A stretch of DNA of 64,000 nt from Thecamonas trahens ATCC 50062 (lineage: Eukaryota; Protista; Apusomonadida): assembly GCF_000142905.1 (NCBI RefSeq), contig NW_013657649.1:331033-395032 (forward strand), read 5' to 3'. The notes below the pieces were generated by a model. That model searched no databases and was not told the DNA's origin. It saw nothing but the letters and a program-made list of their open reading frames with translations. A program made the translations under genes and the position numbers. Positions 29,834 to 64,000 of the stretch are shown here, in pieces. How positions within the stretch are numbered: position 1 is the stretch's first letter; every line of letters starts with the position of its first letter.

Positions 29834-30123
29834 GGCCAAGTGTGACGTCTGTGCGTGAGCGAGTGGTAGTACGTGCGGTGTGTGCTCTTGAGTCTGTGGC
29901 CTCCTTGCTCAAAGTGCGACTCGTGCTGGCCCTGCCAAGGGCTTAGGGCTTGGGGCTTGGGGCTTGGGCGGGGCTTGGGGCGGGGGGCAGCAGGGGGCAG
30001 AGAGAGACAGAGAGAGAGAGAGGCAAGGCCTGATCCTCCATTCGTTTGTCTTGCTGCCCTGCCGATACCCCTCGATCCGCCCGATCCACCGTTCCACCCA
30101 TCTTCCCCCCTCCCCCCCCCCCC

Positions 30124-30972
30124 NNNNNNNNNNNNNNNNNNNNNNNNNNNNNNNNNNNNNNNNNNNNNNNNNNNNNNNNNNNNNNNNNNNNNNNNNNNNN
30201 NNNNNNNNNNNNNNNNNNNNNNNNNNNNNNNNNNNNNNNNNNNNNNNNNNNNNNNNNNNNNNNNNNNNNNNNNNNNNNNNNNNNNNNNNNNNNNNNNNNN
30301 NNNNNNNNNNNNNNNNNNNNNNNNNNNNNNNNNNNNNNNNNNNNNNNNNNNNNNNNNNNNNNNNNNNNNNNNNNNNNNNNNNNNNNNNNNNNNNNNNNNN
30401 NNNNNNNNNNNNNNNNNNNNNNNNNNNNNNNNNNNNNNNNNNNNNNNNNNNNNNNNNNNNNNNNNNNNNNNNNNNNNNNNNNNNNNNNNNNNNNNNNNNN
30501 NNNNNNNNNNNNNNNNNNNNNNNNNNNNNNNNNNNNNNNNNNNNNNNNNNNNNNNNNNNNNNNNNNNNNNNNNNNNNNNNNNNNNNNNNNNNNNNNNNNN
30601 NNNNNNNNNNNNNNNNNNNNNNNNNNNNNNNNNNNNNNNNNNNNNNNNNNNNNNNNNNNNNNNNNNNNNNNNNNNNNNNNNNNNNNNNNNNNNNNNNNNN
30701 NNNNNNNNNNNNNNNNNNNNNNNNNNNNNNNNNNNNNNNNNNNNNNNNNNNNNNNNNNNNNNNNNNNNNNNNNNNNNNNNNNNNNNNNNNNNNNNNNNNN
30801 NNNNNNNNNNNNNNNNNNNNNNNNNNNNNNNNNNNNNNNNNNNNNNNNNNNNNNNNNNNNNNNNNNNNNNNNNNNNNNNNNNNNNNNNNNNNNNNNNNNN
30901 NNNNNNNNNNNNNNNNNNNNNNNNNNNNNNNNNNNNNNNNNNNNNNNNNNNNNNNNNNNNNNNNNNNNNNNN
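30124..30972. other. Assembly gap
   Basis: Run of N. Confidence 0.99.
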
Positions 30973-31223
30973 GCCCTCGCCGACTACCCCTCCGATCCGC
31001 CCGACTCCACCCGTTCCCACCCATCTTCCCCTACCCCCCCCCCCCCCCCCCCCCCCCCTCCCCCCCTCCCTCCCCAGTCAGCCCGATTCCAACCACCAGC
31101 CGAACATCGAACACCACCCCACCCCGACCACCCGACCACCCCACCCCACCACTCGACCACCCCCATCCCGACCACCCGACCACCTCACCCCGACCACCCT
31201 ATCTTCCGACGACTGCAGGGATC

Positions 31224-32126
31224 ATGTCGTCATCATCCGACACGCCATGGGCACCGAGCCCGGCAGCATTCGAGTCGTGCGAGCCAAAGTGGTTGGCGGA
31301 GCAAAGGGTCGATGCGTATGGAGAGCGCTCGGTCCGCTTCCAGGAGGTTCTCCTCGTCACGGCTGTTATGGCTCCGTTTGTGGCGCTGCTTGCGGCGGTG
31401 GATGGCGCCGATGCGAAGATTACCTTGGCGGTCATTGTTCTCACTGTCTTCTACATCATACATGTGGTCCTTGCCATCATGTGGGCCCGCTCTCGTGCCC
31501 GTGTTGTGCTCTTCTTTGAGATCTTTGCCCTGATCTTGTTCTTTGCCATTGCTGTTGCTGTCGTCATCGCTGTCCTCGAACGCATCATCGTCGACGGGGA
31601 GACCGGTATCCAAATCCTCAATCTGTTTCTCTCGCTGCTGGTGGCTGGTGTCTTTGCCGGCGCGTTGTACTTTCTCGTGCCCATGCGGCGAATCCTCAAC
31701 TCCGAGTTCAGGGTTGCGCAAATGGAGGCGCTACGGTCAAGGCGGTCGCGCTCACGGTTGCGTTCCCGATCGCGTTCGCGATCGCGTTCGCGGTCGCGTT
31801 CCCGATCGCGCCGTCGCTCACCGTCGCTCTCTGACTACACCAGCTCAAACTCAGATTGGTCGCGCGGCGAGCCACGACACCCCGCCAGGGGCAAGGGCAA
31901 GGGCAAGGGCAAGGGCAAGGGTAAGAGCAAGGCATCTGCCGATCTTGACCGCTACACTGTCGACTCGGAGCAGTCCCTGTCGTCGGCGAGCTCGTCGTCG
32001 CCCTCGTCCGACTCGGGCCCGGCACAGGTCCCGGCCGGTACGGGCGGCGGCAAGGGTGGCAAGAAGAGCAAGGGTGGCAAGGGCGGCGGCAAGGGCAGCA
32101 GCGACAGCCGCAAGGCCCAGGTGTAG
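31224..32126 (+). CDS. Hypothetical four-TM membrane protein with RS-dipeptide and GK-rich C-terminal tail
   Basis: Four hydrophobic segments, then (RS)n and (GK)n. The start may lie upstream, because there is a possible acceptor CTGCAG at ~31213-31218 next to the gap. Confidence 0.72.
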   Translation: MSSSSDTPWAPSPAAFESCEPKWLAEQRVDAYGERSVRFQEVLLVTAVMAPFVALLAAVDGADAKITLAVIVLTVFYIIHVVLAIMWARSRARVVLFFEIFALILFFAIAVAVVIAVLERIIVDGETGIQILNLFLSLLVAGVFAGALYFLVPMRRILNSEFRVAQMEALRSRRSRSRLRSRSRSRSRSRSRSRSRRRSPSLSDYTSSNSDWSRGEPRHPARGKGKGKGKGKGKSKASADLDRYTVDSEQSLSSASSSSPSSDSGPAQVPAGTGGGKGGKKSKGGKGGGKGSSDSRKAQV

Positions 32127-32159
32127 AAAAAAGCCCGATATGTTTACGTCTCTATCGAC

Positions 32160-33127
32160 TTAGCCAGTAATGACGCGGTAGATGCCGTTGGCAGCGGCCG
32201 CGAGGCGCTGCATGTTCTGGGCCGCCACCGGGTCGGAGGCGCCGGCGATAAAGGCGATGGTGTTGACCGACTTGTCCGAGCCGGCCCACGCCTTGGCAGC
32301 CGAGATGATGCCGTCGATCGAGGTGTTGGGCTCACCGTCGGTGAGCAGGTAGACGCCGATGCAGTTGGGGTCATCGAACGCGAGCTGCAGGCCCTTGAGC
32401 ATGGCGGTCGAACCGCCGGGCGACATGTTGGTCACAAACGAGACAGCCGACGCAATGTTGGCCGTGTTGACGTCGACAACGCCCTGCTGCCAGGCCGTGG
32501 CCGACGATGCAAACTCGACAACGTTAAACTGCTGCTCGTCGGTGAGGACGTCGGTGATGATCTCGGTGAGCGCGGTGCGAACGGCGGCCATGCGCGAGGT
32601 CGAGCGCGAGCCGTGGTCGTACGAAAACGTCGTCGACATCGAGCCCGAGGTGTCGACCACAAAGACAATGCGCGGGATGTTGGTCACATCGCCAAAGATG
32701 CAGTTGCGGTCCGGCGTGGCCGCCAGAATCTCAAGCGCGTCGCGCTTGTTGAACGTGTTGCTGAACGTCGCCAGAATCGTCGCGTTGTTCGCCTTCTTGT
32801 CCACAATCATCGGCGAGAGCACCTTGAGTACGTCGAGCGAGTTCAGCTCCGACGAGAAGACATGGAGCACGTCAACAGCATCGTCGCACGTCAAGTCGAG
32901 CACGTTCGACGAAATGGCGGTGAGCACGTCAATGGCCACGAGCGAGTTGGGGAACGCCGTCATCAGCTGAGCCGTCTGCTGGCCGCTAAAGCCGGGATGG
33001 TTGGCCGCGACAAACTTCTCCACCATGTCCTGACGATCGAATGAGCTGGAAGTCGACGTCAGGTTCGACATCAGCTCCGAAAAGGTGGCGTCGTTAACGC
33101 CGCCATCTGCGCGGTCGAGGTGAGTGG
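32160..33127 (-). CDS. DUF4476-like helical region plus von Willebrand factor A domain protein (last exon; 5' exon probably in or near the gap)
   Basis: MIDAS motif VFVVDTSGSM, QFNVVEF, GGST, YLLTDGEP, VNTIAF. Acceptor TTTTTTTTTCACAG ends at 33128. Confidence 0.8.
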
Positions 33128-33407
33128 CTGTGAAAAAAAAACCTCCACACGGACACAAATCCGATATCACGTGCGGACTCTGCCGACTTGAACGTGGAGC
33201 TGTAGAAGGGGACAGGAGGGAACAGATAGAGAGAGAGGAAAGAGAGGGCATGCTGGGGATGCCTACAATGAGCATTGGCATGCAAATGTGTGGGTGGTCG
33301 TCGTGGGGAGCGGTAATGGAGGGCAGCGGGGAGGGAGACGGCAATAATGCGCATGTGCCACCCATGATTCACGAAGGTGGGGATCAATGCCGCCCCCTCC
33401 CCCCCCC

Positions 33408-33874
33408 NNNNNNNNNNNNNNNNNNNNNNNNNNNNNNNNNNNNNNNNNNNNNNNNNNNNNNNNNNNNNNNNNNNNNNNNNNNNNNNNNNNNNNNNNNNNN
33501 NNNNNNNNNNNNNNNNNNNNNNNNNNNNNNNNNNNNNNNNNNNNNNNNNNNNNNNNNNNNNNNNNNNNNNNNNNNNNNNNNNNNNNNNNNNNNNNNNNNN
33601 NNNNNNNNNNNNNNNNNNNNNNNNNNNNNNNNNNNNNNNNNNNNNNNNNNNNNNNNNNNNNNNNNNNNNNNNNNNNNNNNNNNNNNNNNNNNNNNNNNNN
33701 NNNNNNNNNNNNNNNNNNNNNNNNNNNNNNNNNNNNNNNNNNNNNNNNNNNNNNNNNNNNNNNNNNNNNNNNNNNNNNNNNNNNNNNNNNNNNNNNNNNN
33801 NNNNNNNNNNNNNNNNNNNNNNNNNNNNNNNNNNNNNNNNNNNNNNNNNNNNNNNNNNNNNNNNNNNNNNNNNN
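33408..33874. other. Assembly gap
   Basis: Run of N. Confidence 0.99.
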
Positions 33875-34000
33875 CGACCCCCCCCCCTCCCCCCCCCACA
33901 CTCCCCACACTCCTCGCACTCACCCCACTCCACAGGAGCAGACCGAGCTGTATAGTGCTTGCACTACGCCTCCTCCCTCCTCCTCTCCCACACACGGACC

Positions 34001-55030: not shown

Positions 55031-56105
55031 TGCGTGCTGACGACTGGCTGCACGGGGAGCATAGCTGTGCTGCGCATGCCAAGCACCGTGCCGGTTGGCA
55101 CGATGTGTGGGCACTGGAAGACAGCGAAGTTCACGCGAGGAAACCTGTCACGCTGTCGGCTTGTTTGCGCCGATGTTGCGAGACTTGGAACTGTGTCGGA
55201 TCAGCTGTCGCATCAGTTGAGACTAGCGTGTATCGACCCCAACCGCAAACAGAACCGTCATCAGCGCAAGCGAGCTGGACTCTCCAGCCAGCGACATGCT
55301 TGGCACGAGGTGATTGAACATAGTCGCCATCACGGCTGCATCCACTTCCAGCTGTAGCGACGAGCTGGTGCGGTACGTACAGACGAACACCAGCGAGAGT
55401 ACATATACCATGAGCACAGCGAGCAACATCGGGCTCCCTCAGAGCCGCACGGGAGGATCAATGTAGAGATAGCCACGCCCAACCGCCGCACTGGTACCAC
55501 GTCCTCGCACCACCCCGCTCGGTCCACAACGCCGGAAAATCGTAAGGCTTACGCTGAGCGCGCCGCATCACCGGCAGCCACCGTGAGCCGCACCTGCATT
55601 GCCACGACGGCAGCCATGCTGGCGAGGAGGAACCACCGCTAGTCCAGCAACCACAGCCAGCTCGGCGTGCTTCCCGCACCAGCACATGTGCCACGGCGCC
55701 GACGCCAGATAGCTTGCGCATGGGCAGGAGACCCGCTCCGACACGCACGTGTACAAAGTTTGTGCCTTGGCCACTCGCCGAAATTTCAGCATCACACGCT
55801 GCGGGACTGAAGCCGCCACCTGCGGACCGGACCGACCGCCGACAGCTACGAAGACGGCTACTGCCAGCGAATGCGCGACGCACTGGAGAACGGCCACGCC
55901 AGAACTACAGCCGTAACCGGTGCCGCCGTCGCCTCGACAAACAGAGCGGACCTTTAGCGGCGGCGCCACGTGCTGGGTGCGTGGGTCGCGACTGGCTCAT
56001 ATTTTCGCTGGAATCGCGTGGCAACCTCTGGGCACGACACACCCACCCACCCCACTCATTCTGACTGCGAGCGTAATCATGAGCTACAAAGCACGCGAAA
56101 CTGAG

Positions 56106-59100
56106 ATGACGCGTCCTTCCGTGTCCGGTTTCGGGTTGGAGTACTGGTGCTGCTGCTGTGCGTCGTTGTCGAGGGCGTGGCCGGTGCGAGTGGTGGCGGA
56201 CACACGCCGTTTCCGCGACCAGACATTCCGCAGTGTCGGGCCGAGATGGCGGCGGTGGAGCACGAGGTGAGCACTGCAGCGAATGGTCCGTGGTCTTTGA
56301 TTGCGGTTGACATGGATGGAGATGAAGATTTGGATCTGGTGTCGGCGTCGGCGTATGACGACAAGATTGCGTGGTACGAGAACACCGACGGGGTCGGGAC
56401 CTTTGGGCCGCAGCAAGTGGTGAGCACGGCTGCAGACAGTGCGCGGTCTGTGATTGCGGCTGACATCGATGGAGATGGCGATCTGGACCTGGCGTCGGCG
56501 TCGGAGAGCGACGACAAGATTGCGTGGTACGAGAACACCGACGGGCTCGGGACCTTTGGGCCGCAGCAAGTGGTGAGCACTGCAGCGAACGGTGCGCAGT
56601 CTGTGATTGCGGCTGACATCGATGGAGATGGCGATATGGACTTGGCGTCGGCGTCACTCGACGACGACAAGATTGCGTGGTACGAGAACACCGACGGATT
56701 CGGGACCTTTGGGCCGCAACAAGTGGTGAGCACTGCAGCGGACCGTGCGCGGTCTGTGATTGCGGCTGACATCGATGGAGATGGAGATATGGACCTGGCG
56801 TCGGCGTCGGAGCTCGACAGCAAGATTTCGTGGTACGAGAACACCGACGGGGCCGGGACCTTTGGGCCGCAGCAAGTGGTGAGCACTGCAGCGAACGGTG
56901 CAAAGTCTGTGGTTGCGGCTGACATCGATGGAGATGGCGATCTGGACCTGGCGTCGGCGTCGTCGAGCGACGACAAGATTGCGTGGTACGAGAACACCGA
57001 CGGGGCCGGGAGTTTCGGACCGCAGCAAGTGGTGAGCACTGCAGCAGACGGTGCACAGTCGGTGATTGCGGCTGACATCGATGGAGATGGCGATCTGGAC
57101 CTGGCGTCGGCGTCGCACGCCGACGACAAGATTGCGTGGTACGAGAACACCGACGGCTCTGGGAGTTTTGGACCGCAGCAAGTGGTTAGCACCGCAGCAG
57201 ACTTTGGTCAGTCTGTGATTGCGGCTGATATTGATGGAGATGATGATCTGGACCTGGCGTCGTCGTCGGTGCTCGACAACAAGATTTCGTGGTACGAGAA
57301 CACCAATCAGACTGCGGCGTTCGGGCCGCAGCAAGTGGTGAGCACTGCAGCGGTCTATGCGTCGTCCGTGATTGCGGCTGACATTGATGGAGATGGCGAT
57401 CTGGACCTGGCGTCGGCGTCGGCGTATGACAACAAGATTGCGTGGTACGAGAACACCGACGGGGCCGGGAGCTTTGGGCCGCAGCAAGTTGTGAGCACTG
57501 CAGCGAACGGTGCGCGGTCTGTGATTGCGGCTGACATCGATGGAGATGGCGATCTGGACCTGGCGTCAGCTTACTCGAACACCATTGCGTGGTACGAGAA
57601 CACCGACGGGGCCGGGAGTTTTGGGCCGCAGCAAGTGGTGAGCACGACAACGACCCTTGCGGTGTCTGTATTTGCGGCCGACATTGATGGAGATGGCGAT
57701 ATGGACCTGGCGTCGGCATCGAGTTCTCTCGACCAGATTGTGTGGTTCGAGAACACCGACGGCGCGGGGACCTTTGGACCGCAGCAAGTGGTAAGCACGG
57801 CTGCGGACGGTGCGGCGTCTGTGATTGCGGCTGACATTGATGGAGATGGCGATCTGGACCTGGCGTCGGCGTCGCAGGTCGACGACAAGATTGCGTGGTA
57901 CGAGAACACCGACGGATTCGGGACCTTTGGGCCGCAGCAAGTGGTGAGCACAGCAGCGACCAGTGCGCGGTCTGTGATTGCGGCTGACATGGATGGAGAT
58001 GGCGATCTGGACCTGGCGTCGGCATCGTTCAACGACGACAAGATTGCGTGGTACGAGAACACCGACGGGCTCGGGACCTTTGGGCCGCAGCAAGTGGTGA
58101 GCACTGCAGCGAACGGTGCAAAGTTTGTGGTTGCGGCTGACATCGATGGAGATGGCGATATGGACCTGGCGTCGGCGTCGCACGCCGACGACAAGATTGC
58201 GTGGTATTCCTGTTTCTCGCGTGGACCGTTCCACGCTTACGCAGCAACCACTCATTCTCTCGACACTTCGTGCATGTCGTACAACTCGCCCGCCGCCTGC
58301 CTCTCATCGGCACTCACCCGCCTCTCACGCTGCATGCGCGATACCCTGCTCCTTCCACCAGGCCGATACTCTTGCTTTCGCGACAAGCACCTGCACATGT
58401 TTGATAAGAGCATCATTCTCGCCTCCACCGAGTCTGGAACCGCCACCTTTGCCTGCAATGGCAACGCGCTCTTCCGTCTCACCTCCACTTCTAACTCCTA
58501 CACCGAGCTTGATCTGGTAGGCCTCCGACTCGAGAACCTCGGCAACAGCCACGCCACGCCAATCGTCGGCTCAAGTGGGTTGCGTGTTGAGGATGGCAAC
58601 TCCGTCCTTCGCCTCCGCAATGTCACTATTGACGGCGGATCGTCGCCTTCAACCAGCAACCAACTGGCCGGTGGTCGTGGTGGCTGTTTACTTGTGACGG
58701 ATGGTGCAAAAGTCGAAATCGTCAACTCGACCCTGACTCGCTGCACAGCTGGTAGTGACGGTGGCGCTGTGGCCCTAATGGATTCAGGAAGTGAGCTAGT
58801 GCTCCAGAGCTCTCGCATCGAATCATCAACTGCCAGCAACGACGGTGGCGCCGTGTGGGCAGGTGCCGATACTATTGTTGCCATCGCGGATGGATCGAGC
58901 CTATCGGCAAACTCTGCTGGCAGCAGTGGCGGCGGACTATCCGCTTCCGACAACACCCACATTGTGCTCATGGACTGTTCTCTGGACAGCAACACCGCTG
59001 GCGGTCTCGGCGGTGGCCTCTTTCTCTCTCCGTTCACCATCGCCAACGTGTCGACGTCTGCGATCACCGGCAACACCGCCAGCTTTGGCGGCGGCCTTGC

Positions 59101-61495
59101 TGTATCCTCCGACCCCACATCGACCGCCGGCAAGTTCTCCGTCGTCGACATTCCTACCGCATCCCCTCTAGCGCCCACTTCTTCGCATGCCCTCATGCTT
59201 GACGACGTCACGGTCACTGCCAACACCGCATCGCGGGTCGGCGGCGGCTTCTTTGTGTGCGGGGCCCAAGTCACTGTCTCTGGTCACTCGGCCTGGTCCT
59301 CCAACGCCGCCCTCTGGTCGCCCACAGCGCGCTCATCCGCCGATGCGTTCGAGTGTGGCGGCGGGCCGTGGCTCGACACCAGCGCGGCTCAACTCGACCT
59401 AGGCTCACCTGATATCCAAGGCCCACCCGCCACTCTCGCCTGGGCCGTCGAGCCCACTGCAGTCGTTGAGGCCGGAGGCGTCGTCACCGGCGCGGTCCGC
59501 GTCTACGACGCTTTTGGTCGCAATGTGGTCTACCGAACCACCATTGCACAGACCATCTACGCAGCGTCGCCGGCTCTACCACCGCTTGGTCTGCCCGACA
59601 TCCTGCTCGAGTCACCCAACGTGGCACTGCCTTCGGCCACGCTTTCCATCGTCGATGGCGCCCTCGTACCTGCCACCGTGACGTTCTCGGTCTCTCTCGT
59701 CACCGACGGCTCCGGCCGCGGCCTTCCGGTGCCGCCACTTCCAGGCTCGGTCGACATTGTCCCATGTGGACTCGGCCGCGGCGGCGTGACCGAAGACGAC
59801 GTCACCACCTGCGCGCCCTGCCTCGATGGCACCGAGTCGCTGGAGGTTTCGCTGGCCCCATGTACGGCCCAGTCTTCTTGTCCGACCAACACCCTCCGGC
59901 TTGCAGCCAACACAACCAACGAGCCATGTGTGTGCGTGCCCGGCTTCTACACCCCATCGGGCCAGTTCAACGAGCCTTGCATCGCATGCCCATCCGGAGG
60001 CCTCTGCACGGGTGGCACAGCTCGACCTGTGGCCGGCCCGGGCTTCTTCCCGGACGAGAGCGATCCAACGCTCTTCCTCGCCTGTCCCAACCCCGATGCA
60101 TGTGCCGGCCAAGGCCGATGCCAGGCCGGATACGGCGACCGGCTGTGCGCGCAGTGCCTGCCCGACTACTATCGGCTCCGTGGAAAGTGTTACGCATGCA
60201 AGGCTGGCGTCAATACAATCGTCACGGTGCTTTTGGTGCTTGCGGCGCTTGTTGTTGCGGCTGCGCTGGTGAGCTTCAGCCTGGCCGAGGCGGTGCGGTA
60301 CAAGTTTGCCGCCGCCATGATCGGGCTCAACGCTCTGCAAATATCCGCCCTCTACGGGAGGCTCGAGCTCGACTGGGGTCCCGTCGCCGCGGTCTATTTT
60401 GACATCACGTCGTTTGTCAACCTCAACCTCGAGCTCACCAGCCCCGAGTGCAGCCTGGCCTCAGGCGCCGACGCTTGGGTGATCAAACTGGTGTTGACGC
60501 TAGTCCTGCCAGTCCTAGCTGCGGCTGCTATCGTGGTCGTCGGCTGCGGGTTTGCTGCCGGCATCACGATCAAGCTTCGGCCGGTCGCAAGCTACAGCCT
60601 GGGCCAGCTTGCCGGCGCATGCAAGCGCGCATGGTTTCAGAGCTTGGTCCTTCTTTACCTGCCGCTCACCGGCGCTGCGTTCTCAGTCTTTGGGTGTCGG
60701 CGCGATGAGGCAGGGAGGTGGGTGCTCGACGCCGATCCGGTGCGGAGCTGCTACAACTCGGCCTGGTGGACCGGGCTGTTCCCCATTGGACTTGCTGGCA
60801 TCGTCGTGTATGCCGTCGCCATTCCTGGGTGCGTGGTGTGGGTGCTGCGCCGTGCGCGCGATCGCATGGAGGCGACAACCTTTGCAGCGCGATACGGGTT
60901 TCTGGTCGGTCGTTTTACTAGTTCGCACTGGTGGTTCGAAGCTGCCATCATGGCCCGCAAGCTCATGGTGGTCATGTGCATGACGTTCTTTTTCACTGAC
61001 GAAGGCAAGGCCAACGGCACGGTGTTTGCGCTGGTGGGCTCATTCGCCCAGCTCATCTATGCGCAGCCGTACGGTCGCTCCTTCCACAACGCACTAGCAG
61101 TGACTGTGCTAGCGGCGACCATGTCTGTGCTCTACGCCGGCACGTTTGATGACTACACGCTGCGGATGGTCGGAGTGGTCGTCGGAGTGGTGGCCACCAT
61201 GGCCGCTATTGTCATCGGCAACGGCATCGATTTGTGGCTCATTGCGCGGCACGAGCGGCAAGCTGACGAAGAGTACTTTCAGAGCGGCGTATCTGATTTT
61301 GCTACTAGCGCTGCTACGCCGGTGGGCGGAGGCAGCTTTGGTAACGATGTCGAGTTGGACAAGGGTAGGCTTGGATCGGACGAGCCCGTCAATAGCCACT
61401 CCATCGAGATGTTCTCCGTCGGAGGCGAAGCCGATGACTCGATCTCGTTGGGGCTACATTCAGCAAACGCGCCATCAATGTACTCCATTGATTAA
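56106..61495 (+). CDS. Large cell-surface protein: signal peptide, 13 FG-GAP/VCBS repeats, GGA-repeat beta-helix, Cys-rich stalk, multi-TM C-terminus; probable missing base near 56138
   Basis: DxDGDGDxD Ca-binding blades; N.A...GGA/GGG repeats; CxxC-rich region (CVPGFY, CPNPDAC, GY..RLCAQC); about 8-9 hydrophobic helices with LDWG, FVNLN, RYGFL, WWFE. One inserted G joins MTRPSVSGFGL to the hydrophobic leader VLVLLLCVVV. Confidence 0.87.
56261..58207 (+). repeat. Coding tandem array, 13 x ~153 nt (51 aa) FG-GAP/VCBS blades
   Basis: Consensus PQQVVSTAxxxAxSVIAADIDGDGDLDLASASxxDDKIAWYENTDGxGTFG with very high nucleotide identity; unit 9 is 2 aa shorter. Confidence 0.96.
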
Positions 61496-61544
61496 ATATG
61501 AATGCGTTGTCAGTCACCGAACCCACAAGTGTTCGATTCGGCTG

Positions 61545-64000
61545 TGGGCGGAGGGAGTGGCGGGTACGGCGAATGAGCCTGAAGATTGATGTGGGTGGGC
61601 GAATTGAAGAAGATGCAATGGTGTGGGTGTGGGGGATGACGGTGGAGGGGCTTGGGCGGCGAGGGCGAGGAGGACGGACGGGATTGGATTGAGATGGACG
61701 TCGATGGAGACGAGAGCTTGGGATTGAAAGACGAGACAGACCACTGCACTCTAGTCCACCACTGCATTGCCTATCGCTAGTCCTTGACCTCTCTTGCTCT
61801 TCCTCGTCTTGGCCAGCCCGGTGGCTTCGTCGTCTGGCACGGTGATCGGCAGCAGGGGCGGCTGGCGATGAGCAGGCCGGCGGGGGCTGTGATGGGCAAG
61901 GCCGGCGGAGGGAGGGGAGGAGTGGGTTGGAGGGCAGAATGGTAGGCATTGCCATTGATATAGCTATCCGTATGCATCGCCTCCAATGCCCTGTCGATGG
62001 CTAGCTTGCCCTCGGTGGTGCCGGAGGTGGTCGGTCGGCGGCGGGCGGCGGTCGGCGGCGAGCAGCCGGCGGTCGGCAGCGATGCTGCTGATGTGCGTAT
62101 CGGCGCACGTGAAGTGGGTGGCTATATTTGCAGGGGTAGTGAGTATGTGTGGTGTGGGTGTGGTGGTTGTGGGTGGACAGGTTGGGGAGTGGGGGTCGGA
62201 GATGGGCCCGGGGAGGAGGGGTCAGCAGCATCGAAGGGACACAGGGCCAACAACTTGGGCCCGAGCCGGCAGAACTCGGATTCTGGAATACTGCAGCTGT
62301 GGATAGGAGACTGTGCGAGGGGATAGTGTGTGTATGTAGTAGGGTAGTAATGAAATCAGATTGGCCATATCTTGCAATGAGTGTGGTGGGGGTTGTGTGC
62401 GGGGTCGGGCGGTTGAGGACGTGCTCAACCACCTAGGGCAAACAAGTCGACGCGAAAGTGAGCCGAGGAAGATGGGTATGGATGACAGCGATATTGATAC
62501 TGGTGATAGTGTGGCGTGAGTGATGACCTTGAGTGTGGTCGCGGGTGGCGTAGCGGGTAGTGAGAAGGAGCTAGGTGGTGATGAATGTGGGCTGATCGGA
62601 CGAGCGGGCGACGGCTGGCGGCTGGTGGTCGGCGAGGCAGGGGCAGCAGAGGGAGCTGGGTCGGGGCTGGGTGGCTTGAGATTGCTGTTGGTTGGTGGAC
62701 ATGCAGTATGGCATGTGATGGTTAAGGGGAATGGGTGTCGAGGTCGGGAATGAGGATGCGGGTGAGCTGGAGCGAGGAGACGAGGAGGACGAGGAGGAAG
62801 AGGAAGCCGAGTGCGCGATGGGATGGTGGGGGGTATGACCATGGCACGGTGGTGGGAGTTGTGGCTGCCATGATAGTGATGGTAGTGGAGTAGGGGGTGG
62901 GGTGGTCGTTTGTGGTGACGGGTGGTAATGAGTATGGTAGGGGGGATGAGGGGGTCGTCACGTGGGTGACGGGACGGGCGAAGCGGTGCTGGGTATGGCG
63001 ATTGGGCTTGAGCATTGATGTGGGCGAGTTGGATGAGGATGATGGGTGGGTGTGGAGTGTGGGCAATGAGGGTGAAGGGGCTTGGGCGGCATGGGCGAGG
63101 AGGGCCGACGGGATTTGATTGATGGACGTCGATGGAGACGATGGCTTGGGAATGCGGGGAAGGCAGACCACTACACTCTAGCCCACCACTGCATTAGATA
63201 TCGTTTGCCCTTGCCCTCTCTTGTTCTTCCTTGTCTTGGCCAGCCCGGTGGCCTCGTCGTCTGGCTCGGTGATCGGCGGCAGGGGCGGCGGGCGATGAGC
63301 AGGCCGGCGGGGGCCGTGATGGGCAAGACTGGAGGATGGAGGGGGGACTGGGTTGGAGGGCGCACTGGTAGGCATTGCCATTGATATAGCTATCCGTATG
63401 CATCGCCTCCGATGCCCTGTCGATGGCTAGCTTGCTCTTGGTGGTGCCGGAGGTGGTCGGTCGGCGCGGGCGGCGGTCGGCGGTGAGCAGCCGGCGGCCG
63501 GCAGCGATGCTGTTGACGGGTTGGTGTCGGCTGATGTGAATATCGGCGCACGTGAAGTGGATGGCTATGTTTGCCAGGATGGTGCGTACGTGTGGAGTGG
63601 GTGTGATGGTTGTGGGTGTGATGGTGGGGAGTGGGGGTCGGAGATGGGCCCGGGGAGGAGGGGTCAGCAGCATCGAAGGGACACCAGGACAACAAGCTGG
63701 GCCTGAGCCGGCAGAACTCGGATTCCGGAATACAGCAGCTGTGGTTTGGAGATTGTGCAAGGGGGGAGGGTGGGCGTGTAGTAGAGTAGTAGTGAAATCA
63801 GATTGGGTATATCTTGCAATGAGGTTGGTGGGGGCATGTGCGGGGTCGGGCGGTCGAGGACGTGCTCAACCACCTAGGCAAACAAGTCGACGCGGAAATG
63901 AGCCGAGGAAGATGGGTGTCAATGACAGCGATACTGATACTGGTGATAGTGTATGGCGAGTGATGACCTTGGGTGTGGTCGCGGGTTGTGTAGCTGGTAG
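61545..64000. repeat. Diverged non-coding direct duplication, period ~1.43 kb; the second copy runs off the window
   Basis: Shared blocks: GATGGACGTCGATGGAGACGA (~61693/63121), GATATAGCTATCCGTATGCATCGCCTCC (~61957/63383), GAGATGGGCCCGGGGAGGAGGGGTCAGCAGCATCGAAGGGACAC (~62199/63641), AAACAAGTCGACGCG (~62440/63880). Confidence 0.9.

What the first reader, a model, noticed from the sequence alone, without database searches (positions are those of the whole stretch)
56261..58207. Homogenised FG-GAP repeat array with two hypervariable, reshuffled segments: candidate diversifying receptor system
Seen: 13 units are nearly identical even at synonymous sites, yet their differences concentrate in two windows. 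V1 reads NGPW, DSAR, NGAQ, DRAR, NGAK, DGAQ, DFGQ, VYAS, NGAR, TLAV, DGAA, TSAR, NGAK. V2 reads AYDD, ESDD, LDDD, ELDS, SSDD, HADD, VLDN, AYDN, YSN (with deletion), SSLD, QVDD, FNDD, HADD. The same variants recur in non-adjacent units in new combinations: AYD in 1 and 8, HAD in 6 and 13, SAR in 2 and 12, NGAK in 5 and 13. Established: concerted evolution with a few diversifying positions on one propeller face characterises fungal HET/NLR WD40 arrays, where repeat shuffling creates new specificities. Inference: an extracellular, Ca2+-stabilised propeller receptor on a stalk with a multi-TM base could generate a recognition repertoire for prey, pathogens or self/non-self.
Basis: partly seen in the sequence, partly recalled or inferred. 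Interest (0 to 1): 0.8.

Follow-up and report, generated by a model that had tools for sequence, protein, structure and literature searches.

The report
Shuffled hypervariable propeller blades, protist receptor
A surface-receptor gene of the flagellate Thecamonas trahens has an integrin-like double propeller built from 13 near-copies of one blade that differ mainly at five loop codons on one face and are exchanged among at least five genes, the evolutionary mode known from fungal non-self receptors but here in an extracellular fold and a new lineage.

Summary
The window carries 13 tandem FG-GAP units, twelve of 153 nt and one of 147 nt. Differences concentrate in codons 6, 7 and 9 (V1) and 29 and 30 (V2), with a weaker third patch at codons 43 and 45.

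- **Organism and gene:** Thecamonas trahens ATCC 50062, an annotated 1795-aa protein.
- **Selection:** non-synonymous change at V1 and V2 is 1.6 to 3 times the mean synonymous rate. The same codons are hypervariable in a paralogue's array.
- **Structure:** AlphaFold gives a 7-blade plus a 6-blade propeller. V1 and V2 are the 4-1 and 2-3 loops, on one face, opposite the Ca2+ loops.
- **Exchange:** recombination tests are significant and unit 13 is a mosaic of units 5 and 6. The same unit type fills arrays at five or more loci whose adjoining sequence is only 28-31% identical in protein. Units therefore move between genes.

This matches the fungal NLR repeat mode (Paoletti 2007) and the known class of recently amplified propellers. 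It is not a new principle. Nothing shows somatic diversification or a ligand.

This copy has a 1-nt frame break after its ATG and 13 blades, where two relatives have 14.

The scan earlier noted hypervariable WD40 repeats in an NLR-like gene elsewhere in this genome.

The parts
56106..56108 (+). ATG used by the public gene model; out of frame with the long ORF
   Evidence: The model P0001 starts here and removes 29 nt as an 'intron' to regain the frame.
56113..56114 (+). Site of a 1-nt deletion relative to the paralogue on contig 91, inside the signal-peptide coding region. It is a frame break or a sequencing error.
   Evidence: Alignment A1; translation of the upstream region.
56147..61495 (+). 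Long open frame of 1782 codons. In order: signal-like hydrophobic stretch, 13 FG-GAP units, beta-helix, Cys-rich DUF7630, multi-helix membrane module, acidic/Ser-rich tail.
   Evidence: 100% match to a T. trahens protein.
56267..58249 (+). Array of 13 FG-GAP units. In each unit, V1 is codons 6, 7 and 9 (unit start +15 to +26), V2 is codons 29-30 (+84 to +89), and V3 is codons 43 and 45 (+126 to +134).
56240..57313 (+). Predicted first propeller, seven blades (model residues 8-365)
   Evidence: AlphaFold pLDDT 90.7. Integrin alphaIIb headpiece Z 31.9, rmsd 2.7 over 330 residues.
57320..58213 (+). Predicted second propeller, six blades (model residues 368-665)
   Evidence: Designed six-blade Pizza6 propellers Z 31.8, rmsd 1.8 over 243 residues.
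57185..57337 (+). Unit 7, the most divergent unit. Its 3-4 loop has lost the Asp-Gly-x-Gly pattern. It sits at the boundary between the two propellers.
   Evidence: pLDDT dip at model residues 360-370. Unit 7 of the contig-91 and contig-34 arrays also departs from the consensus there.
57491..57637 (+). Unit 9, 147 nt, with a two-codon deletion in V2. It is shared with an array on contig 45.
   Evidence: 93% identical to unit 8 of the contig-45 array, with the same deletion and the same V1. Regular unit pairs between the two arrays have mean identity 82% and maximum 89%.
58097..58249 (+). Unit 13, a mosaic (V1 as unit 5, V2 as unit 6), truncated after strand 3. The N-terminal strand at 56255-56272 is the likely fourth strand.
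58595..59113 (+). Right-handed beta-helix region (stalk)
   Evidence: Pfam PF13229, E 7.6e-6.
60074..60199 (+). Cys-rich DUF7630 module just before the membrane
   Evidence: Pfam PF24633, E 5.9e-7.
60203..61276 (+). Membrane module of about nine to ten helices. At least 70 genes of this genome share it.
   Evidence: AlphaFold helices 102-459; 93 matches in the genome; no convincing solved relative.
61496..62528 (+). 3' flank duplicated together with the gene on contig 91
   Evidence: The 92.5%-identical stretch (window 58928-62528) runs about 1 kb past the stop codon, to the end of contig 91.

Best explanation
This is one member of a small subfamily of Thecamonas trahens surface receptors. Their ectodomain is a double FG-GAP (integrin-alpha type, Ca2+-motif) propeller that has been rebuilt from copies of a single blade.

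Unequal recombination and gene conversion between 153-nt units keep the blade scaffold alike. This happens within arrays and between at least five loci, and it reshuffles units and parts of units. Selection keeps amino-acid differences at about five codons per blade.

Those codons lie in the 4-1 and 2-3 loops, on the face that binds ligand in integrins and opposite the Ca2+ loops. Each gene therefore presents a different set of loops on a constant scaffold.

The propellers sit on a beta-helix and Cys-rich stalk above a multi-helix membrane module that many receptor-like genes of this organism share.

- **Shown:** the sequence pattern, the excess of non-synonymous change, the recombination signal, the inter-locus sharing, the predicted fold.
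- **Inferred:** that the loops bind ligands, probably glycans or surface proteins of prey bacteria, substrate or other cells, and that diversity is the selected trait.
For: - **Family:** FG-GAP_3 E 1e-103 with 12 stretches. Every unit carries the Asp-x-Asp-x-Asp-Gly motif.
- **Variation by site:** positions 1 and 2 of the hypervariable codons have diversity 0.68 against 0.20 at four-fold sites. A second array repeats this.
- **Rates:** parsimony counts on 41 units give dN over mean dS of 1.6, 1.8 and 2.1 (codons 6, 7, 9) and 3.0 and 2.3 (codons 29, 30). Poisson p is 3e-4, 6e-9 and 4e-5 for codons 9, 29 and 30. All other codons are below 1.1 except codon 43 at 1.3.
- **Shared descent of the scaffold:** rare codons are fixed in 22 of 22 units, although neighbouring genes use GAT for 26% of Asp codons and GGA for 9% of Gly codons.
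- **Recombination:** PHI test p = 0.0075 (window array, 20-nt range), 0.0005 (contig 91) and 0.0005 (contig 45). Unit 13 is a mosaic.
- **Between loci:** the 550 codons after the array are 28-31% identical in protein to contigs 45, 73 and 34, with no blastn match. Unit backbones are 80-87% identical in DNA.
- **Partial overwriting:** in the contig-73 array, units 2-7 are 89-96% like the window consensus and units 8-14 only 55-69%.
- **A shared unit:** a 147-nt unit with the same deletion occurs at two loci at 93% identity.
- **Fold:** AlphaFold pLDDT 90.7. DSSP places V1 between strands 4 and 1 and V2 between strands 2 and 3. Seven-blade and six-blade matches.
- **Constraint:** dN/dS is 0.22 against the paralogue over 1078 non-repeat codons.
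- **Relatives without the pattern:** other family members, including those from other organisms, have ordinary diverged blades.
Against: - Per-codon tests that use only the synonymous changes of the same codon are not significant (p 0.06 to 0.8). In the contig-91 array the variable codons have pS 0.53 against pN 0.57.
- Units within the window array are hardly more alike than units compared across to contig 91 (0.100 against 0.099). A single old burst followed by divergence explains much of the within-array pattern.
- PHI for the window array is significant only at the shortest range.
- The start of this copy is frame-broken. It has 13 blades, where contigs 91 and 34 have 14.
- There are no expression, population or binding data.
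- I could not read model coordinates, so the 'one face' statement rests on strand order and on established propeller topology.
Confidence: 0.65

Rival explanations
1. A single recent amplification of one blade, as happens continually in propellers, was followed by ordinary divergence. The loop positions are simply unconstrained, with no selection for diversity and no continuing exchange.
For: - Within-array and between-paralogue unit distances are equal.
- Backbone synonymous divergence (about 0.2) is similar to the paralogue dS of 0.21.
- Codons 43 and 45 behave neutrally.
- Recently amplified VCBS and FG-GAP propellers are common (PMC9218822).
Against: - Neutral loops cannot exceed the synonymous rate, yet codons 9, 29 and 30 do so by 2 to 3 times with small p values. 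The excess repeats in a second array.
- The same unit type occurs at loci whose flanks are 28-31% identical in protein.
- There is a half-overwritten array, mosaics and PHI signals.
Confidence: 0.17
2. The copy in the window is a decaying or non-functional member. It has lost its reading frame at the start and one blade, so its pattern is a relic and not a working receptor.
For: - A 1-nt deletion right after the ATG relative to the paralogue. The public model needs a 29-nt 'intron' inside alignable coding sequence.
- 13 units against 14 in contigs 91 and 34.
- Disrupted young propellers are frequent (PMC9218822).
Against: - 1782 codons are open, with no stop.
- dN/dS is 0.22 against the paralogue.
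- The 7+6 model is confident. Arrays of identical blades can close with different blade numbers (PMC6805158, listed; abstract only read).
- The indel may be a sequencing error.
Confidence: 0.13
3. An assembly artefact: the array order or number was produced by mis-assembly of similar repeats.
For: Arrays on contig 45 are interrupted by runs of N, and their two halves lie in opposite orientation.
Against: - No two units in the window are more than 93% identical.
- The frame stays open through all units.
- The site-specific pattern cannot arise from mis-joining, and it recurs at independent loci.
Confidence: 0.03

Closest known systems
Fungal HNWD/NLR genes (het-d, het-e) with highly internally conserved WD40 repeats (Paoletti, Saupe, Clave 2007, PMC1805685; Chevanne 2010, PMC2873952; Dyrka 2014, PMC4986451)
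   Same: - Near-identical repeat units.
- Exchange within and between loci.
- Variable unit number.
- Four or five codons per unit with excess amino-acid change, placed on the interaction face of a propeller.
   Different: - Different fold lineage (FG-GAP/VCBS, 51 residues, Ca2+ motif).
- Extracellular on a membrane receptor, not cytosolic behind a NACHT/NB-ARC domain.
- An apusomonad, not a fungus; no RIP.
- No known phenotype.
Recently amplified, highly repetitive beta-propellers, including VCBS and FG-GAP lineages (Pereira and Lupas 2022, PMC9218822; PDB 2ymu)
   Same: A propeller rebuilt from one blade, tandem double propeller, frequent disruption of young copies. 2ymu is among the Foldseek matches.
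   Different: - As far as I read it, that survey is mostly bacterial and, among eukaryotes, 84% fungal.
- The passages I read do not treat site-specific hypervariability or inter-locus exchange for FG-GAP arrays.
- Thecamonas is not named in its main text.
Integrin alpha subunit headpiece
   Same: Seven FG-GAP blades with Ca2+ hairpins on the lower face. Ligand contact is through the 4-1 and 2-3 loops on the upper face (established knowledge). The model matches alphaIIb and alphaV at Z about 32.
   Different: Two propellers, no thigh or calf domains, beta-helix stalk, about nine or ten membrane helices instead of one, no evidence of a beta partner. Not an integrin.
PRDM9 zinc-finger arrays (for example PMC3890296)
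   Same: A coding minisatellite with homogenised units and positive selection at the few contact residues.
   Different: Binds DNA, is nuclear, is a single gene, and has a different fold.
Expanded FG-GAP plus EGF 'integrin-like' genes of the diatom parasite Pirsonia diadema (PMC13524835)
   Same: A protist with many membrane proteins that carry FG-GAP_3 repeats and Cys-rich modules. Their up-regulation in the host-seeking stage suggests a role in contact with prey or host.
   Different: No homogenised arrays or hypervariable codons are reported there. It is a different lineage and the relation is unknown.

Membership tests
FG-GAP / VCBS beta-propeller superfamily | Significant match to the FG-GAP or FG-GAP_3 profiles | tested here: met
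   PF13517 E 1.1e-103, 12 stretches; PF01839 E 1e-24.
FG-GAP / VCBS beta-propeller superfamily | Cation-binding Asp-x-Asp-x-Asp-Gly motif in the hairpin between strands 1 and 2 | tested here: met
   The motif is present in all 13 units at codons 15-23 and lies between DSSP strands 1 and 2. Metal binding itself was not tested.
FG-GAP / VCBS beta-propeller superfamily | Four-stranded blades closed into a propeller | tested here: met
   AlphaFold pLDDT 90.7. Residues 8-365 match seven-blade propellers and residues 368-665 match six-blade propellers.
Integrin alpha subunit | One seven-blade propeller followed by thigh and calf domains, a single membrane helix and a short tail | tested here: not met
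   Two propellers, a beta-helix, DUF7630 and about nine or ten helices.
Repeat arrays under concerted evolution with diversifying selection (fungal NLR type, as a mode of evolution) | High internal nucleotide conservation of units, including shared rare codons | tested here: met
   Backbone distance is 0.10. Rare codons are fixed in 22 of 22 units.
Repeat arrays under concerted evolution with diversifying selection (fungal NLR type, as a mode of evolution) | Units more alike between loci than the flanking gene sequence is | tested here: met
   Units are 80-87% identical in DNA, against 28-31% protein identity and no blastn match in the adjoining 550 codons. There is also a chimeric array and a shared short unit.
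Repeat arrays under concerted evolution with diversifying selection (fungal NLR type, as a mode of evolution) | A few codons with non-synonymous rate above the synonymous rate | tested here: met
   Against the mean dS, codons 9, 29 and 30 are significant and codons 6 and 7 nominal. Against each codon's own synonymous changes the test is not significant. Likelihood codon models were not run.
Repeat arrays under concerted evolution with diversifying selection (fungal NLR type, as a mode of evolution) | Selected codons group on the interaction face | tested here: met
   V1 is the 4-1 loop and V2 the 2-3 loop by DSSP order. In a four-strand meander these lie on the same face, opposite the 1-2 and 3-4 loops. 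Coordinates were not inspected.
Repeat arrays under concerted evolution with diversifying selection (fungal NLR type, as a mode of evolution) | Polymorphism of unit number and order among individuals | not testable with these tools
   Only one strain is available. Paralogues differ: 13 units, 14 units, and at least 13 on contig 45.
NLR / STAND receptors | Central NACHT or NB-ARC NTPase domain | tested here: not met
   No such Pfam match in this protein. It works like the repeat domain of these receptors but is not a member.

The most novel reading that the evidence does not exclude
Thecamonas keeps a shared pool of propeller blades that are exchanged among several receptor genes. Individuals would then differ strongly in their surface loop sets, and these receptors would discriminate prey, pathogens or kin. 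This would be an extracellular counterpart of the fungal NLR repeat system. Near-identical 171-nt arrays also lie behind NB-ARC genes in the same genome, so repeat-based recognition would be a general strategy in a close relative of animals and fungi.
Probability: 0.3. Interest if true: 0.8.

Novelty: new member of a known kind. Interest (0 to 1): 0.58.

Why it matters
How phagotrophic protists recognise prey and other cells is largely unknown. Apusomonads sit next to the group that contains animals and fungi and are used to trace the origin of integrin adhesion.

- The family gives concrete, testable candidates: a confidently modelled scaffold and five named loop positions per blade.
- It shows that the mode of 'homogenised repeats plus hypervariable contact residues' also occurs in an extracellular FG-GAP propeller and in this lineage. 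That is beyond the cytosolic NLR repeats and PRDM9 considered here.
- It warns annotators. The public name (fibronectin type III protein) and the 29-nt intron in the public model are doubtful.

Tried and rejected
- **Telomere proximity.** The gene lies 2.5 kb from the contig end, but there is no TTAGGG-type repeat in the window. No conclusion.
- **Positional orthology with contig 91.** The diagonal is no better than the off-diagonals (84% against 84-90%).
- **Identity of the membrane module.**
  - Pfam gives only a non-significant TRP (PF06011) alignment, E 4.7.
  - Foldseek has nothing below E 0.06.
  - The wide structural search has best Z 7.9, at noise level for helical models.
  - The ESM Atlas call failed because the machine was busy.
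- **Codon bias as the cause of backbone identity.** Rejected, because the fixed codons are rare ones.
- **General hypermutation of the repeats (RIP-like).** Rejected on what the alignment shows: the many scaffold codons between the loops are invariant or nearly so, and all four bases occur at the variable positions.
- **More genome sequence for the NB-ARC arrays.** I used loci already held instead.
- **Not run:** the large representative protein search (not needed) and likelihood codon models (not installed).
Full report
**What is there**

The window is the last 64 kb of a 395-kb contig of a 28.7-Mb eukaryotic genome. The neighbouring ORF is TAF1 (DUF3591 plus a bromodomain). The protein search identifies the organism as Thecamonas trahens ATCC 50062. 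It matches the gene at 100% to an annotated 1795-aa protein that NCBI names 'fibronectin type III domain-containing protein'. The Pfam scan here gives no match that supports this name.

The long ORF 56147-61495 encodes, in order:
- a signal-like hydrophobic stretch;
- 13 FG-GAP units (FG-GAP_3, E 1e-103);
- a right-handed beta-helix;
- a Cys-rich DUF7630 module;
- a membrane module of about nine to ten helices.

**The observation**

TRF reports a 153-nt period, 12.8 copies, at 56259-58206. In codon register the units run from 56267 to 58249, and unit 9 is 147 nt.

The nucleotide alignment and the per-codon tables show that differences pile up in three places:
- codons 6, 7 and 9;
- codons 29 and 30;
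- more weakly, codons 43 and 45.

With the six variable codons removed they still differ by about 10%. However, rare codons are fixed in every unit of this array and of the array on contig 91. Examples are GAT-GGA-GAT in the Ca2+ motif, ATT, TCT and CAA. Neighbouring genes use GAT for only 26% of Asp codons and GGA for 9% of Gly codons. The common scaffold therefore reflects shared descent or homogenisation, not codon preference.

**Is the variation more than relaxed constraint?**

Diversity at the first two positions of the six variable codons is 0.68, against 0.20 at four-fold degenerate sites (p = 7e-5). The codons were chosen on the window array. Tested on the contig-91 array they give 0.58 against 0.14 (p = 2e-5).

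I also made a parsimony count on a tree of 41 units from the four homogenised array pieces (window, contig 91 and the two pieces on contig 45):

| Codon | dN over mean dS | Poisson p |
|---|---|---|
| 6 | 1.6 | 0.019 |
| 7 | 1.8 | 0.006 |
| 9 | 2.1 | 3e-4 |
| 29 | 3.0 | 6e-9 |
| 30 | 2.3 | 4e-5 |
| 43 | 1.3 | not significant |
| all others | 1.04 or less | not significant |

Caveats:
- Tests that use only the synonymous changes within the same codon are not significant.
- In the contig-91 array the variable codons have pS close to pN.
- Recombination distorts any tree.

I read this as good, though not final, evidence for diversifying selection at V1 and V2. V3 is consistent with neutrality.

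**Recombination and exchange**

- The PHI test is significant in three arrays. In the window array this holds only at the 20-nt range.
- Unit 13 carries the V1 block of unit 5 and the V2 block of unit 6.

The strongest result concerns other loci. The same unit type occurs on contigs 91, 45 (two pieces), 73 and 34/96. The table compares the 550 codons directly after each array with the unit backbones.

| Compared locus | Protein identity of the 550 codons after the array | blastn match there | DNA identity of unit backbones |
|---|---|---|---|
| Contig 91 | 70% | yes (85-88%) | 90% |
| Contig 45 | 28% | none | 87% |
| Contig 34 | 31% | none | 80% |
| Contig 73 | 29% | none | see next point |

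- On contig 73, units 2-7 are 89-96% like the window consensus and units 8-14 only 55-69%. That array is half overwritten.
- Unit 9 of the window and unit 8 of the contig-45 array share the same 6-nt deletion, V1 and V2. They are 93% identical, above any regular pair between these arrays.

Units therefore move between genes. Other family members, including relatives from other organisms, have ordinary diverged blades. The homogenised type is confined to this subfamily.

Against continuing within-array homogenisation: units inside the window array are no more alike than units compared with contig 91 (0.100 against 0.099).

**Structure**

AlphaFold with a 21-row alignment gives mean pLDDT 90.7.
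- Residues 8-365 align with seven-blade propellers. The integrin alphaIIb headpiece gives Z 31.9, rmsd 2.7, 330 residues.
- Residues 368-665 align with designed six-blade propellers (Z 31.8, rmsd 1.8).

By DSSP each unit has four strands. Codons 3-7 form the loop between strand 4 and strand 1, and codon 9 opens strand 1. The loops are:
- codons 15-22: the Ca2+ hairpin between strands 1 and 2;
- codons 29-32: the 2-3 loop;
- codons 40-45: the 3-4 loop.

In a four-strand meander, alternate loops lie on alternate faces. V1 and V2 therefore share one face, opposite the Ca2+ loops and V3. From established integrin structures this is the ligand-binding face. I could not read coordinates, so this rests on topology.

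Structural neighbours also include propeller lectins: the Photorhabdus lectin PLL4 and the Agrocybe lectin AAL2. The survey literature links VCBS-type propellers mainly to carbohydrate recognition (PMC9218822). One binding pocket per blade is thus as plausible as one composite surface.

**State of this copy**

The ATG at 56106 is out of frame with the long ORF. The cause is a 1-nt deletion relative to contig 91 inside the signal-peptide region. The public model removes 29 nt as an intron to repair the frame. Since that stretch aligns as coding sequence in the paralogue, I take the intron to be an annotation patch.

The copy has 13 units, where contigs 91 and 34 have 14. Against decay:
- 1782 open codons;
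- dN/dS of 0.22 against contig 91 over 1078 non-repeat codons.

In that comparison dS falls from 0.42 next to the array to 0.06 in the membrane module. This points to a recent conversion of the 3' part together with 1 kb of flank.

**Comparison with what is known**

The mode of evolution is that described for the WD40 repeats of the fungal het-d and het-e family. There, concerted evolution acts within and between loci, unit number varies, and four selected codons lie on the interaction face (PMC1805685). It also fits the general finding that propellers, including VCBS and FG-GAP lineages, are continually re-amplified from single blades and often decay (PMC9218822).

This gene is not an NLR and not an integrin (see the membership rows). 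What is new is:
- the combination of an FG-GAP fold with an extracellular position on a multi-helix receptor;
- an apusomonad host;
- clear inter-locus sharing of units.

Two full-text searches found no paper that describes this. A protist with a large FG-GAP/EGF family tied to host contact has been reported (PMC13524835), which makes a contact or recognition role reasonable. That paper does not address homogenised arrays.

**Earlier notes of this scan**

A follow-up note (s1-740947) reports near-identical 57-residue WD40 repeats with five variable codons in an NLR-like gene of this genome. I confirmed only two things: the genome has at least 17 NB-ARC matches, and one of them is followed by a 171-nt array at 92% matches.

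**Verdict**

I class this as a new member of a known kind, of moderate to good interest.

Noticed in passing
window 60203-61276 and at least 70 other places in the genome: The membrane module of about nine to ten helices is shared by 93 matches in this genome, behind different ectodomains. The AlphaFold model is confident in the helices, but neither Foldseek (best E 0.06) nor the wide structural search (best Z 7.9) finds a solved relative. Pfam gives only a non-significant TRP (PF06011) alignment.
   Followed up: partly
window 30001-34000: A stretch of 36-47% G+C inside a window that is otherwise 60-69% G+C. Not examined.
   Followed up: no
L023 (contig 45, 186000-195999) and L024 (contig 45, 246500-256499): Two array pieces lie 60 kb apart in opposite orientation, each ending in a run of N. 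One has the signal peptide and first blades; the other has the last blades and the rest of the gene. They share identical units. This is probably one gene of about 20 blades split by a scaffold misjoin, or an inverted duplication. The 3' piece also has an in-frame stop between units.
   Followed up: partly
L025 (contig 34) and L026 (contig 96, a 12-kb contig): Nearly identical copies of a 14-blade family member with a few amino-acid differences. This may be an unmerged second haplotype or a very recent duplication.
   Followed up: no
window 58250-62528 against L021 5113-9629: Synonymous divergence from the contig-91 paralogue falls from 0.42 just after the array to 0.06 in the membrane module. 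The similarity continues 1 kb past the stop. This suggests a recent gene conversion of the 3' part.
   Followed up: partly
window 62976-63968: This stretch matches the 3' flank of the contig-91 copy at 85%. That flank also matches window 61496-62528, so the flank is tandemly duplicated here, as another first-stage note said.
   Followed up: partly
L061 3123-3593 (contig 49) and other NB-ARC loci: At least 17 NB-ARC matches in the genome, many 2-5 kb from contig starts.
   Followed up: partly
window 55905-58255, minus strand: Several long antisense open frames (up to 383 codons) overlap the array. This is usual for G+C-rich repeats and nothing suggests they are genes.
   Followed up: no
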